A stretch of DNA of 63,959 nucleotides, counting the filler, from Bigelowiella natans CCMP2755 (Eukaryota; Protista; Cercozoa), in assembly GCA_000320545.1 (NCBI GenBank). It is 6 parts of 6 records of this genome, joined end to end, with 100 filler letters (N's around TTAATTAATTAA, not from the genome) between each part and the next. Parts side by side here need not be neighbours in the genome. Positions count along the whole stretch, not along the records: positions 1 to 4,722 come from ADNK01003605.1; 5 more parts are not named here. The stretch is one strand, 5' to 3'. Below the pieces are notes generated by a model, which made no database searches, had not been told where the DNA came from, and saw only the letters and a program-made list of their open reading frames with translations. A program made the translations under genes and the position numbers. This document shows positions 1 through 4,722 of this stretch, piece by piece. Position 1 is the first letter of the stretch; the number at the start of each line of letters is the position of its first letter.

Positions 1-380
1 TAGTCCTCCAGAGCTGTGGACAAGCTAAACAAGCTCATAAAGAGGAAGGATCATGGAGTTGCGAAGGTAGTAGTATTCCTGCTGCTGCATCGACGGTTTC
101 ATGCATGCGGCGTGTGTATGTGCGTGTAAGTGCTATCCTGCTCGGGTTTCGTGCTTATTGTTGTCGTTGTGCGTGCGTGTGCGTGTGTTTGTGCGAATTT
201 TCAGCTCGAGGTCGTTCTCTGTGTGGCCTCTGGGATCCCATCAAAGACGGTATTACTGTTTAGTCGTAGTAGGAGGAGTGGTAGCAGTCATTAGTAGTCG
301 AAGCTGTCTGGAAGTTGTACTTCGCAGCCTCCCAAGACAGGATGGTGTTATTGTTATTGAACGTCGCTGAATGGGCTTTA

Positions 381-427
<47 letters not shown>

Positions 428-968
428 CTGTATCGCGCGCGCGCACACACACACACACACACTCTCGCTCCTCCTTCCTCTTCCTGCTTGTTCCCTCCCC
501 CCTCCTTTTCCCCTTCGCCTAGACGAAGAAAATGGACGGCGCCTTTGTGCTCCAGAGATCACTGACAGAGAACCAGGTAGGAGAGAGATGCTTGGCGACG
601 ACGATGATGACGATGATCATGATGATGCTGAAACGCAGTGCTTTGCGGTGTCTGGTTTGGAGGTTACTACCTCGCTGTTTGTCCCCCCCCCCCCCCCTCC
701 AAAACTTTGGCAAGTAACTTTGCAAATCATGTGTTGCTGCTGTACAGGCAAACTACCTCTACTCCCTCAAAGAGCAGGCCCGTGACATGCGCAAGAAGAA
801 GGTTTTTCCGACATGAAAACTTGGGGGGGGGTGGCGTGTGGGGATCAGCATTATCTCCATTGCTTGATGGTGTGACCAAATGCCGCGACAACCTCATCAG
901 GCACAGGTTGAGCAGGAAGCACGTCGCCAGGAGTTCAAGTTCAGACTAGACGGTAGTGATACGCTTCA

Positions 969-1617: not shown

Positions 1618-2160
1618 TCAGAAGGGGTGCGGCCAACAGACGACCTTATGCTTTAGCAGCCTTCGTATTATCGCGCTAAGGAGTGATAAAGACTAATGAC
1701 ACCAAGAAACACGGTCCTCTCATCTCAAACATATTCGTTAGTGTTGGGTGGCGGTCTATTCACTATTTGATCGATGGAGTGCCGCGGGCTGCTACCGCTG
1801 CACATGCAGGCAGTTCATCTCGCGTTGTAAAGGCGCACATGTCCTCTCCACTCATTGTAACACTCAATAAATTATACTCATCAACCCCAGAGCGGCTCCT
1901 TCTGGCTGGCCGTCAACAGGCGGTACGGCTTGCTGCATCCGTGGATTATTTACTATCGAACCACAAGCTGTCGCTTTATTGCTAGAGATAAAGTCCTTCC
2001 TTGAGTCTCACGTTACTTCTTCTTGTTGCATGAATGGTTCCAGCTAGCAGGGTTTGCGCGGCCGTGCGCAAGATCATGAGGATGCATTCGCATCGGCAGA
2101 AACATGAGCCACATTCAGTGCAAGCATGCAATGAGCTCGCGCGCAGCAGACTGATGCACC

Positions 2161-2356
2161 ATGCCCCACATTTCATTTCCCATCTGCCGTCAGTGGGGGG
2201 AAATCGCAAAATTTTCATTTCAAAAATCACCTGCTGACGACCTGCTGCTGAACTGAATTGCTAGGATGACATGGCAAAATCACAGGCACATCCCATGTGT
2301 TTTGTGAAAACAATCTTTGTTGAAAATGACATGGCAAAAATCTGCAGCAAAGCATT
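2161..2356 (+). repeat. Left terminal inverted repeat
   Basis: Near-identical to the reverse complement of 4000-4195. Mismatches are transitions apart from a short patch at about 2211-2227 and a 1-bp indel. Confidence 0.9.
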
Positions 2357-2466
2357 GCGTCATCACCCACACAGCAGAATTTCTCATGCATCATGGAATC
2401 AAGTCTCCTTTTCCTCCAGTTCCAGAACACCTGGAAGGACAAATGGGTGCTGGCCGAGCTCCGATT

Positions 2467-3368
2467 TCAGCTGGGGAAAACCATCAACTTTTCCACGTTC
2501 TGCAACTTTCCCATTGGATTTTGCACAGGATTGGCAGGCAAAATCTTTGACGCAGTCTTTGCCTCCACGCGAACTTCCCTCTGGGAGAACAAAAATGAGT
2601 GAACCTGCAATGAACATTCATTGCATTCTGCTTCTTTTTTTTTCTGTTCTGGTTCTTTGATTTCGTGATTGAGCAAACAAGCATGATTGTCATGAACCAC
2701 AACTCTGAAGTTTCGTGGTGATGTGTGCTTGTTGCATTTCTCAGGTGCAAGTTTGTCAACCAAATCATGCATGCTGTCGCAAACGGTTGGTCCCAATTTG
2801 CATTTTTCAAAAAACTTTTTTGTTTCTGTCAATGCAATGGCATCATCCTTTTTTTTCTCTTTTTTTCCTGCAATGTTGCAAAGAGCATCGTGAGCAAGAT
2901 TTTCACACTTGGATTTTTCAAATGAATTTTCGCAAGAGTTCACAATGGCATCAAACACACAAGAGTTCTCTCTGTTGCACCTTTCAGGTTGATGGAACAG
3001 ATCACCAAAAGTTTCAGCACTTTGGTCAATTTCACACTTGAGGCATTTGCAATTCACAGCCACATCGTTGTCATCACTTTTTGCTGTGATTTCCTGATTT
3101 CACCAATTTCGTGTTCACTCAATGATTCATCATCGCACGACCCATTGCAAACAATTTTGATGCAATCACTGCACGTTCCTTTGAAAGCACGAAAAAAAAA
3201 TTGTGAAAAAAGGTGAATCAAGACCGAATCAAAGTTCAGCCTCTTGGTCTGGAGCCAGGTTGCATTCTGTTCTGCTTGGTGGACCATTTCGTGATGTTGA
3301 CAAGAAAGCAGTTGACAAGTGTGACGTTCCTTTGTTGAAATGAAAAATCCATGGCAATGCAATGTCAA
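2467..3368 (-). pseudogene. Frameshifted relic ORF of the TIR element, possibly of Polinton-like/viral origin
   Basis: ORFs 3054-3368 and 2467-3063 abut in different frames. The 198-aa part is K/E/N-rich with 0 Tyr and 14 Cys, and reads like a normal low-GC protein when C/H are restored to Y (KFFEKYKLGLTVYD, DNHAYLLN). Confidence 0.6.
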
Positions 3369-3999
3369 AAAAGCGTGGCATCACTTTGTCCATTGTGAAT
3401 CAACCAAAAGACAGAAATGCTTGTTGGCAGTTCATTCCAAACGTCACTCAAGTGAACACATGGCTTCCATGAGAATGAACCCAATGTCAGGTGAAAGCTT
3501 CAAAGAGGCCCAAGAGAAGCAGAGGGGGGCAGACAGACGGTGGTCTGTTTGGATTCAGTGTTGATGCAGATGACCTGATTGTGCATGCACGCAGTGCAGG
3601 TCACGCACGTCACGCTGGCTGGGGGAAAGTGCCCAAACCACACGCATCACGTGGCGATGCATGGTGCTGCTGGTGAAGCAGATGGTCAGGCTTGCTTCCT
3701 TTGTTGGCACAAAGGAGCCGCGTGCAGCGATGTGCTGCGACTTGCACGTCGCAGGCACAGAACTCGCCTGCACTTGCAGCCTCTTGCCACGTGCTTGTCG
3801 CAGCCTGCAAACGCCCGCAGATCTCTCTGCTGTTGCAGCTGGCCACTGCAAGCAAGCACTTCGCGCGCTGAGTGCAAAGCACTCCAACAAAGATCCAAGT
3901 TGTTCTTCCGTCAGCTACTTGTCTGATGGCTTTCCGTTTTTTGATTTGAACGTTCTCACTTGTTGTTTCAGGTGAGAACAAACTTGCAGTGTTTTCAAC

Positions 4000-4195
4000 G
4001 ATGCTCTGCTGTGGATTTTGCCATGTCACTTTTGACAAGGATTGTTTTCACAAGACACGTGGGATGTGCCTGTGATTTTGCCACGTCATTCTGGCAATTC
4101 AGTTCAGCAGCAGGTCGTCAGTGGGTGAAGTTTTGGAATTTCAAGTTTGCGATTTCCCCCTGCTGACGGCAGATGGGAAACGAAGTGTGGGGTGT
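4000..4195 (-). repeat. Right terminal inverted repeat
   Basis: Reverse complement matches 2161-2356. Confidence 0.9.
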
Positions 4196-4561
4196 GTGTA
4201 GCGCGTACCACTACGCGGGCACAAGTCACGTGCGACAACAAAGGGGTTGTCGCGGATATAGAATATAGATAACGTAGATATTAATACAGCATAGGCACGT
4301 GGGTTCCGGCGGGACTCATGGCAGCACACCGGAAGTGTGCTGCCCCACGTGCGGCGGCATTCGCGAAAGCTTCGCGAATGATTACGCAGTGCACGATTTA
4401 ATAAAAATATAATCTTTAATAAAAATAAACACAACTCTTCAAAAGGAAGCAAACGTGCCTTTCCCCCCCCCTGCCTACTTGTGCACGTAGCGCCTCGGCC
4501 TGTGAACACCTTACGCGCAACAACCTTTGGCTTCCACACACGGGAAACGATTTGACTAACA

Positions 4562-4722
4562 ATGTCACAGCAGCTAGAAGAACAGCAGGACTTTGGCTCG
4601 CAGGCCGTGCAAGGGCACGAGCAGAAACAGAAAGGAAGGGCGATACGGACGCTAAGGAAGAGGAGGAACACCTCCACAGGCACCGCCGGGACCAGCACCC
4701 GGGATAGAAAGCAGATGCAGCA
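4562..4722 (+). CDS. Possible first exon of a hypothetical gene, truncated by gap
   Basis: ATG-initiated open frame (MSQQLEEQQDFGSQ...) after a promoter-like region. No homology recognised. Confidence 0.3.

What the first reader, a model, noticed from the sequence alone, without database searches (positions are those of the whole stretch)
2047..4198. Candidate undescribed genome-defence system: targeted TpA->TpG/CpA (A-to-G) hypermutation of a mobile element, a mirror image of RIP
Seen: by eye only 2 TpA dinucleotides remain in 2152 bp (2262 in CTAG, 3916 in CTAC), although the region has plenty of A and T and on the order of 100 would be expected. TG, CA, CATG and TGCA are abundant and CpG is retained. 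The zone coincides with a TIR element, stops sharply at the right TIR (TA returns at 4199) and extends about 110 bp past the left TIR. Genes, intronic (TA)n tracts and rDNA in the same window keep TpA. Established: fungal RIP does the opposite (CpA->TpA) on repeats and can leak into flanks; adenine deamination reads out as A->G, and TadA-type deaminases prefer a 5'-T. Inference: a repeat- or heterochromatin-guided DNA adenine deamination (or modified-adenine mutagenesis) pathway acts on both strands. I know of no described system of this kind but cannot search the literature. No candidate enzyme is in this window.
Basis: partly seen in the sequence, partly recalled or inferred. Interest (0 to 1): 0.95.

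Follow-up and report, generated by a model that had tools for sequence, protein, structure and literature searches.

The report
TpA-erased remnant of an integrated virus
A 2.15-kb inverted-repeat-bounded remnant of a polinton-like virus in a eukaryotic genome has had almost every TpA converted to TpG or CpA, the end state of a TpA-specific hypermutation of foreign DNA first reported in a 2026 preprint on the alga Bigelowiella natans.

Summary
Window 2047-4198 holds 2 TpA where about 154 are expected; none of 2000 shuffles gave fewer than 123. CpA and TpG are in excess, and both borders are sharp.

The zone is a decayed foreign element. It has roughly 220-bp terminal inverted repeats (TIRs; 2164-2386 and 3973-4192). 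Inside is a frameshifted 575-bp fragment of the large SF1-helicase gene typical of polinton-like viruses (PLVs).

Comparison with two relatives that still carry TpA fixes the direction of change. At 26 sites where both relatives have TA, the window has TG 13 times, CA 11 times and TA never. A-to-G affects 50% of adenines after T, against 4-9% after other bases. The two TIR arms disagree as TG versus CA at 4 sites, so the changes happened after insertion.

"Undescribed" is out of date. bioRxiv 10.64898/2026.01.13.699255 measured this signature on integrated viruses in Bigelowiella natans.

The enzyme and the guiding signal remain unknown. I could not identify the source organism. The "leak into the flank" is more likely part of the foreign DNA.

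The parts
2047..4198 (.). TpA-erased zone: 2 TA against ~154 expected, with CpA and TpG in excess and CpG partly depleted
   Evidence: In 1-kb bins, 2001-3000 has rhoTA 0.04 and rhoCA+TG 1.69; 3001-4000 has 0.01 and 1.72.
2164..2386 (+). Left terminal inverted repeat arm. It begins CCCCACA. The surviving TA at 2262 lies opposite CA in the other arm.
3973..4192 (-). Right terminal inverted repeat arm. It disagrees with the left arm as TG versus CA at 4 dinucleotides, and as CpG versus CpA/TpG at 3 sites.
   Evidence: In the simulation, P(>=4 such sites by random substitution) was 0.0004-0.006.
2266..2339 (+). Two copies of the subterminal motif ATGACATGGCAAAA, 60 bp apart. They are mirrored in the right arm at 4014-4028 and 4074-4088.
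   Evidence: D12, D14, I10
2596..3170 (-). Pseudogene fragment of the N-terminal region of a polinton-like-virus large SF1-helicase protein. It matches residues ~186-350 of P0058 and ~180-368 of P0002. There is a frameshift near 3094-3095 and no tyrosine codon is left.
2047..2163 (.). TA-free, GC-rich (57%) segment outside the left TIR, with CpA+TpG enrichment of 2.0. Probably part of the foreign DNA rather than mutated host flank.
   Evidence: (P of zero TA by chance ~0.003)
3451..3900 (.). TA-free, GC-rich (57%) internal segment of unknown origin. No homology was found.
2262..2263 (.). Surviving TpA number 1 (in CTAG)
3916..3917 (.). Surviving TpA number 2 (in CTAC)

Best explanation
Window 2047-4198 is an old, non-functional remnant of an integrated polinton-like virus (a "transpoviron-like" element). 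It is bounded by ~220-bp inverted repeats and lies between two host genes. After integration, a host process changed essentially every TpA into TpG or CpA. That is an A-to-G transition at adenines preceded by T, on either strand (equivalently T-to-C at thymines followed by A). The process ran to saturation and stopped at the edges of the foreign DNA. This is the long-term end state of the TpA-restricted hypermutation of integrated viral DNA measured in mutation-accumulation lines of Bigelowiella natans.

Shown here: the depletion, its direction, its context specificity, its strand symmetry, its timing after insertion, and the viral origin of part of the element.

Inferred: that the chemistry is DNA adenine deamination to hypoxanthine, read as G (an ADAT2/TadA-like enzyme is the preprint's candidate); that the process serves as a genome defence; and that some mark of foreign or silenced chromatin sets the borders.
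For: 1. Depletion: 2 TA against 154 expected, with the CA+TG excess (about 189) roughly equal to the TA deficit (152) plus the CG deficit (47). Shuffles never fall below 123 TA.

2. Direction: at 46 TA sites of the related transcript L013, the window has TG 20, CA 19 and TA 0. At 77 TA sites of the environmental virus L002 it has TG 30, CA 21 and TA 0. At 26 sites that are TA in both, it has TG 13, CA 11, TC 1 and CG 1.

3. Context: the A-to-G fraction per ancestral adenine is 0.50 after T, against 0.04 after A, 0.09 after C and 0.09 after G.

4. Protein level: tyrosines in L002 correspond to Cys or His in the window. The window ORF has no Tyr, whereas family members carry 2-9%.

5. No selection: window-specific changes fall evenly over codon positions (22:18:25), and the gene fragment is frameshifted and truncated.

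6. Timing: the two TIR arms differ as TG versus CA at 4 dinucleotides, and the surviving TA at 2262 faces CA. By chance, P is 0.0004-0.006.

7. Not a family trait: 12 related loci have TA o/e of 0.56-0.90.

8. Foreign origin: the ORF's relatives are 1200-1480-aa proteins with a C-terminal SF1 helicase. In L002 this gene sits next to a Pox_A32 packaging ATPase. PMC5499653 describes this layout for PLVs, including those integrated in B. natans.

9. Precedent: preprint 10.64898/2026.01.13.699255 reports 230 of 231 new mutations in two integrated viral regions as A-to-G or T-to-C, all at TpA. It also reports 124 TpA-depleted, CpA+TpG-enriched clusters. The window's two full 1-kb bins pass that paper's thresholds.

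10. The same signature appears in transcripts of an MMETSP culture: a partly depleted PLV helicase and a Tyr-free reverse-transcriptase ORF.
Against: - Only 575 of the 2152 bp can be polarised against relatives. For the rest, the mutational origin rests on composition and on the TIR comparison.
- No second copy of this TIR family was found, so there is no family consensus.
- The source organism could not be identified, so identity with the B. natans system is inferred from the signature and the type of element.
- TpA is its own complement, so the data cannot say whether A or T is the base attacked.
- No enzyme is in the window.
- Raw reads were not available, so a base-calling artefact at modified TpA sites is not formally excluded.
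- The precedent is a single, not yet peer-reviewed preprint.
- Non-TpA A/T sites also show some A/T-to-G/C change (4-9%). This may be ordinary drift towards host composition or looser specificity.
Confidence: 0.85

Rival explanations
1. The outcome is the same but the chemistry differs. The attacked base is the thymine of TpA, for example oxidised by a TET/JBP-type enzyme to 5-hydroxymethyl- or 5-formyl-uracil. That product mispairs with G and gives T-to-C. No adenine deaminase is involved.
For: TpA is self-complementary, so TG and CA outcomes in near-equal numbers (13:11; 222:234) fit either base as the target. From my own knowledge, not tested here: thymine hydroxylation with a TpA preference is known in some protists, and 5-formyluracil can mispair with G.
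Against: There is no evidence for such a modification in this sequence or in the preprint. The preprint found an ADAT2-like candidate with the residues linked to DNA editing. Base-excision repair of modified T would be expected to give a broader spectrum than nearly pure transitions.
Confidence: 0.2
2. Sequencing or assembly artefact. TpA sites in this silenced region carry a modified base that the base-caller reads as CA or TG, and the true DNA still has TA.
For: An artefact would also give a random TG/CA choice per site and sharp domain borders. No reads were available to me.
Against: The element shows independent decay: a frameshift, truncation to 575 bp of a gene of more than 3.6 kb, and 17% residual divergence from L013 after collapsing TA, TG and CA. 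The preprint confirmed TpA mutations with Illumina reads and Sanger amplicons. Transcript assemblies from another data set show the same signature.
Confidence: 0.05
3. Intrinsic composition kept by selection. The element avoids TpA to escape a TA-targeting nuclease or TA-specific transposon insertion, and was already TA-free when it arrived.
For: Avoidance of short motifs is known in mobile elements and viruses. Only one copy is available here.
Against: The TIR arms differ as TG versus CA and as TA versus CA, so the loss came after the arms were last identical. Changes are spread evenly over codon positions in a broken gene. All relatives keep TpA. The 24 of 26 single-transition outcomes fit mutation better than selection, which could use any substitution.
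Confidence: 0.03
4. RNA-level hyperediting. An ADAR-like enzyme, which prefers a 5' U, edits double-stranded transcripts of the element, and the edited RNA is then copied back into DNA.
For: The neighbour preference (U before the edited A) and the editing of both strands resemble ADAR action on dsRNA. The TIRs could form dsRNA.
Against: The element is a DNA-virus or TIR-type element with no reverse-transcription step. The depletion covers the whole element, not only the parts that can pair. The arms diverged in place. In the preprint the mutations accumulate in place in single-copy genomic DNA. From my own knowledge, ADARs are a metazoan family and their neighbour preference is not absolute.
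Confidence: 0.03
5. The 117 bp left of the TIR (2047-2163) is host flank into which the hypermutation leaked, as RIP can leak.
For: The segment lies outside the recognisable inverted repeat and has no detectable homology.
Against: CpA+TpG enrichment is 2.0, an excess of about 15 dinucleotides, whereas host-like sequence would have offered only ~6 TpA. There is no gradient: 1930-2046 has rhoTA 0.88. There is no matching leak on the right side. GC is 57%, the same as the internal segment 3451-3900.
Confidence: 0.15

Closest known systems
TpA-restricted hypermutation of integrated viral DNA in Bigelowiella natans (Mettrop et al., bioRxiv 10.64898/2026.01.13.699255, 2026)
   Same: Same signature: TpA to TpG/CpA only, on both strands. 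The target is foreign DNA integrated in a nuclear genome. TpA depletion is coupled to CpA+TpG enrichment, and the window's 1-kb bins pass the paper's thresholds. The paper also finds transposon and reverse-transcriptase domains among TpA-depleted genes. It proposes the same interpretation (defence, possibly an adenine deaminase).
   Different: The paper's two actively mutating regions are far from saturated: the giant-virus region has TpA rho 0.45, and the virophage region is TpA-rich. Here depletion is essentially complete (0.01). The unit is small (2.15 kb, below the paper's 3-kb cluster definition). It is bounded by inverted repeats and derives from a polinton-like virus helicase. The organism of the window is not established.
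Repeat-induced point mutation (RIP) of fungi
   Same: Context-specific transition hypermutation that inactivates mobile or duplicated DNA in place. It has regional borders and leaves a dinucleotide signature.
   Different: The direction and context are opposite. RIP is C-to-T, mainly at CpA, and creates TpA; here TpA is destroyed and GC content rises. RIP needs duplication and a sexual cycle. The preprint's main target is single-copy and mutates during clonal growth.
APOBEC3 (C-to-U on DNA) and ADAR (A-to-I on dsRNA) antiviral hyperediting in animals
   Same: Deaminase-type, neighbour-dependent transition clusters on viral or repeat sequences. ADAR prefers a 5' U, which matches the TpA context.
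   Different: Those enzymes act on replication intermediates or RNA, not on integrated double-stranded chromosomal DNA over many generations. The families are animal-specific. No such enzyme is identified here.
Polinton-like viruses and the "transpoviron-like" elements integrated in B. natans (Blanc et al. 2015; Krupovic, Yutin and Koonin 2016, PMC5499653)
   Same: The fragment comes from the hallmark large protein with a C-terminal SF1 helicase. The element has terminal inverted repeats, is integrated in a eukaryotic genome, and has related copies that are transcribed.
   Different: Only ~575 bp of the helicase gene's N-terminal part survives. There are no capsid, ATPase or helicase-core genes. 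The rest of the element has no recognisable origin.

Membership tests
TpA-directed hypermutation of foreign DNA (B. natans type) | [quoted passage not shown] | tested here: met
   bin 2001-3000 gives 0.04 and 1.69; bin 3001-4000 gives 0.01 and 1.72. The paper's cluster rule needs 3 consecutive bins. Only 2 full bins fit in this 2.15-kb zone.
TpA-directed hypermutation of foreign DNA (B. natans type) | Substitutions are A-to-G/T-to-C and restricted to TpA | tested here: met
   24 of 26 securely ancestral TA sites became TG or CA. A-to-G is 0.50 per adenine at TpA, against 0.04-0.09 in other contexts.
TpA-directed hypermutation of foreign DNA (B. natans type) | The target is integrated viral or other foreign DNA | tested here: met
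   PLV helicase fragment. TIRs.
TpA-directed hypermutation of foreign DNA (B. natans type) | Both strands are affected (TpG and CpA outcomes) | tested here: met
   TG:CA is 13:11 at polarised sites and 222:234 overall. There is no strand clustering (runs test z = 0.67).
TpA-directed hypermutation of foreign DNA (B. natans type) | A locally elevated mutation rate is measured across generations | not testable with these tools
   This needs mutation-accumulation or population data. With only 2 TpA left, the locus would now be almost silent.
TpA-directed hypermutation of foreign DNA (B. natans type) | The host is Bigelowiella natans | tested here: inconclusive
   The last-exon ORF of the flanking gene found nothing. 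The window's ORFs are not in the protein collection. The related transcripts come from an unnamed MMETSP culture. A search for the sample identifier in papers found nothing.
Fungal RIP | C-to-T at CpA, producing TpA excess and AT enrichment in repeats | tested here: not met
   TpA o/e is 0.01, CpA 1.84 and TpG 1.58. The polarised changes are A/T to G/C.
Polinton-like virus (complete element) | Large SF1-helicase fusion gene plus a capsid and packaging module | tested here: not met
   Only a 575-bp fragment of the helicase's N-terminal region is present. Other ORFs have no Pfam hits. The window holds a remnant, not a complete PLV.
Non-autonomous TIR DNA transposon (MITE-like) | Terminal inverted repeats, a target-site duplication, and many copies | tested here: inconclusive
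   TIRs are present. No clear duplication flanks them. TAGC occurs at both borders of the TA-free zone (2045-2048 and 4199-4202), but this could be chance. No other copy was found in the accessible collections.

The most novel reading that the evidence does not exclude
The window does not come from Bigelowiella natans. TpA-directed hypermutation then exists in at least one further lineage. The unnamed MMETSP culture, with its Tyr-free reverse transcriptase and half-converted PLV helicase, could be the same lineage or yet another. In that reading the process runs to complete erasure with borders sharp to within a few base pairs at the edges of small elements. That would imply a guide that recognises the foreign unit itself (small RNA or a chromatin domain) rather than a diffuse regional effect.
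Probability: 0.3. Interest if true: 0.7.

Novelty: new member of a known kind. Interest (0 to 1): 0.5.

Why it matters
A mutational defence that erases one dinucleotide from invading DNA and raises its GC content is a recently recognised counterpart of fungal RIP and animal APOBEC/ADAR editing. So far it rests on one preprint.

This locus is independent, sequence-only support for it, and it adds three details:
- The process can go to completion (152 of ~154 TpA gone).
- It acts on a small inverted-repeat-bounded remnant of a polinton-like virus.
- Its borders coincide with the foreign DNA to within a few bases.

Such saturated relics are easy to find by a TpA scan. They could be used to map how widespread the system is and what defines its targets. 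The enzyme is still unknown.

Tried and rejected
- Pfam on 10 window ORFs and Rfam on the whole piece: nothing relevant.
- Homologue search with the element's longest ORF: one hit only. The same search with that hit returned only itself.
- IMG/VR scan with P0001: no relative found.
- IMG/VR scans with two TIR patterns, written with R/Y so that ancestral TA would also match: no match.
- Metagenome scan with a family alignment: only distant relatives at 27-35% identity, all with normal TpA.
- Organism identification failed by four routes: the last-exon ORF of the left gene searched by reference, exact look-up of nine window ORFs, a paper search for the JGI sample identifiers, and cluster members that carry only an "mmetsp" transcript label.
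That joined step was left out.
- The preprint's supplementary tables were searched for a 4722-bp scaffold. Only gene identifiers matched.
- Blanc et al. 2015 (PMC4586850) is not held.
- Aligning with TA, TG and CA collapsed to one state, to look for further homology inside the element: the known 575-bp match rose from 75% to 83% identity, but nothing new appeared.
- Strand-clustered (processive) editing was tested with a runs test on TG/CA order and not found.
- Rejected readings: RIP (wrong direction), intrinsic TA avoidance, ADAR-type retro-copied editing, and leakage into host flank. Reasons are given under the rival explanations.
Full report
**Observation**

The piece is 4722 bp. In 2047-4198 (2152 bp; A 547, T 608) there are exactly two TpA, at 2262 and 3916, where base composition predicts 154.5. 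In 2000 shuffles of the zone the mean was 154 TpA and the minimum 123. CpA (234, o/e 1.84) and TpG (222, o/e 1.58) are in excess. CpG is moderately depleted (o/e 0.59), so "CpG retained" is only partly right.

The combined CA+TG excess (about 189) is close to the TA deficit (152) plus the CG deficit (47). The flanks are ordinary, with TpA o/e 0.83 on the left and 1.07 on the right. Their longest TA-free gap is 100 bp, against 1654 bp inside the zone.

**Anatomy**

Inverted repeats are real. The arms 2164-2386 and 3973-4192 have an outer ~180 nt that is 85-89% complementary. Each arm carries two copies of a 14-15-nt motif spaced 60 bp apart. No ORF in the element hits Pfam, and nothing hits Rfam.

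The longest ORF (2467-3063, minus strand) has one relative in the 5.8-billion-protein collection. This is P0001, from a JGI record of an MMETSP culture transcriptome. tblastn shows that window 2743-3170 (minus) matches P0001 residues 186-325, with a frameshift near 3094-3095. A longer isoform from the same sample (L013, 3600 nt) extends the match to window 2596-3170.

A full HMMER scan with P0001 found 56 relatives. Many are 1200-1480 aa with a C-terminal superfamily-1 helicase (Viral_helicase1, AAA_30, UvrD_C_2). The closest, P0002, lies on a 10.7-kb environmental scaffold (L002) directly upstream of a Pox_A32-type packaging ATPase. This large helicase protein is the signature of polinton-like viruses (PLVs). 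PMC5499653 states that the "transpovirons" integrated in Bigelowiella natans are such PLVs and that some of their genes are expressed.

The window therefore holds a 575-bp broken fragment of a PLV helicase gene inside an inverted-repeat-bounded unit. The rest of the unit (2387-2595 and 3171-3972) has no detectable homology. This holds even after collapsing TA, TG and CA to one state. One part of it (3451-3900) is GC-rich at 57%.

The unit sits between what look like two host genes on the plus strand. The left one is a model with five small GT-AG exons (532-1617) and an AATAAA at 1866. Only its last-exon ORF was searched, by reference, and it found nothing.

**Direction and specificity of the change**

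Relatives keep TpA. Twelve related loci have TpA o/e between 0.56 and 0.90, and family proteins have 2-9% tyrosine, against none in the window ORF.

In a codon alignment of the window, L013 and L002:
- At 46 TA sites of L013, the window has TG 20, CA 19 and TA 0.
- At 77 TA sites of L002, the window has TG 30, CA 21 and TA 0.
- At the 26 sites where both relatives have TA, so that the ancestral state is secure, the window has TG 13, CA 11, TC 1 and CG 1.

Per ancestral adenine, counting both strands, the A-to-G fraction is 0.50 after T. After A, C and G it is 0.04, 0.09 and 0.09. A fraction of 0.50 means that one of the two adenines of each TpA was converted, so every TpA dinucleotide was destroyed.

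Window-specific changes are spread evenly over codon positions (22:18:25), as expected for a dead gene. TG and CA outcomes alternate without strand clustering (runs test z = 0.67).

**Timing**

The two TIR arms, which must once have been near-identical, differ as TG versus CA at four dinucleotides. The surviving TA at 2262 faces CA in the other arm. Random substitution gives four or more such sites with P = 0.0004-0.006. Four discordant sites imply about eight converted TpA in ~190 bp, which is what a normal TpA density would supply. So the TpA loss happened in place, after insertion.

Three further arm differences are CpG versus CpA/TpG. Together with the CpG o/e of 0.59, this suggests ordinary methyl-cytosine decay as well.

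**Borders**

On the right the zone ends 6 bp after the TIR, and three TpA follow within 15 bp.

On the left it begins 117 bp before the TIR. That segment has no TpA (P about 0.003 at flank density). Its CpA+TpG enrichment is 2.0 and its GC is 57%, whereas the preceding 117 bp are normal (rhoTA 0.88). The TG/CA excess there (about 15) is larger than the ~6 TpA that host-like sequence would have offered, and there is no gradient. I read it as part of the foreign DNA, for example a longer left end or an older insert, rather than leakage. An empty site would be needed to decide.

TAGC stands at both borders of the zone (2045-2048 and 4199-4202). This may be a target-site duplication or chance.

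**What is known**

A full-text search found one directly relevant paper, bioRxiv 10.64898/2026.01.13.699255. In mutation-accumulation lines of Bigelowiella natans:
- Two integrated viral regions (a 186-kb giant-virus insert and a 25-kb virophage insert) mutate about 1000 times faster than the rest of the genome.
- 230 of 231 new mutations there are A-to-G or T-to-C, and all of these lie at TpA.
- The process is active only in some lines.
- The genome holds 324 TpA-poor coding sequences enriched for transposase and reverse-transcriptase domains, and 124 clusters of TpA-depleted, CpA+TpG-enriched 1-kb windows.
- An ADAT2-like protein is proposed as a candidate DNA adenine deaminase.

The window's two full 1-kb bins pass that paper's thresholds by a wide margin. 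The claim that no such system has been described is no longer true.

**What I could not settle**

The organism. The window's ORFs are not in the protein collection. The related transcripts carry only a JGI sample number and an "mmetsp" label, and the sample number appears in no held paper. The type of element and the signature fit B. natans. I put that at roughly 0.6-0.7, but it is an inference.

The chemistry. TpA is its own complement, so adenine deamination and thymine modification predict the same pattern.

The guide that sets the borders is also unknown.

**Verdict**

This is a new, saturated example of a recently described kind of genome defence, not a new kind.

Noticed in passing
L014:1-1400 (JGI 3300017207, Ga0186406_100841): This transcript joins the 3' part of the PLV helicase (identical to L013 2057-3600) to a GC-rich ~1.2-kb segment. 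That segment has only 6 TpA in its first 995 nt (o/e 0.09-0.18). On the minus strand it encodes a 352-aa tyrosine-free ORF with a reverse-transcriptase domain (RVT_1, E 3e-7). So a TpA-erased retroelement lies next to viral DNA that keeps its TpA, in an unnamed MMETSP culture.
   Followed up: partly
L013:1-3600 (JGI 3300017207, Ga0186406_100434): This transcribed PLV helicase gene is broken into several frames and is only regionally converted. In the first ~1200 nt, TpA o/e is 0.39-0.50, and 41-53% of L002 TA sites are TG/CA. In the remaining 2400 nt, TpA o/e is 0.76-1.02 and about half of the TA sites are kept. Where L002 has Tyr, L013 often has His while the window has Cys, so the hits were independent in the two lineages. 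A chimeric transcript assembly is an alternative explanation for the step.
   Followed up: partly
window 2045-2048 and 4199-4202: The tetranucleotide TAGC stands exactly at both borders of the TA-free zone. This may be a 4-bp target-site duplication of the whole 2049-4198 insert, or coincidence.
   Followed up: no
window 2047-4198: CpG is also depleted inside the zone (o/e 0.59, against 0.86 and 1.08 in the flanks). Three differences between the TIR arms are CpG versus CpA/TpG. This suggests cytosine methylation of the element in addition to the TpA process.
   Followed up: partly
window 2047-2163 and 3451-3900: Two TA-free segments are 57% GC. That is too GC-rich to derive from an AT-rich PLV by TpA conversion alone, and neither has detectable homology. 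The erased unit is therefore a mosaic of sequences of different origin.
   Followed up: partly
window 380-460, 680-700, 820-830, 965-1010, 1215-1232: The introns of the left flanking gene model carry long simple tracts: (CT)n followed by (CG)n(CA)n, C15, G9-14 and (GTA)n. The model's exons are very short (35-54 nt: 532-576, 748-801, 901-952, 1169-1203). The exons were identified by eye and were not joined or verified.
   Followed up: no
window 4296-4382: The right flank holds CACGTG...CCACGTG inverted motifs around a GC-rich core. It also holds a doubled palindromic octamer, TTCGCGAA AGC TTCGCGAA. These are followed by an AT-rich stretch and an ORF starting at 4562 that runs off the piece. This may be a promoter region of the next gene.
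   Followed up: no
L003 (ENA ERZ4903328, NODE_155671): An environmental contig encodes a 93-aa protein 78% identical to the N-terminus of P0001 and has normal TpA (o/e 0.80). Free or unmutated relatives of the transcribed PLV therefore exist in nature.
   Followed up: no
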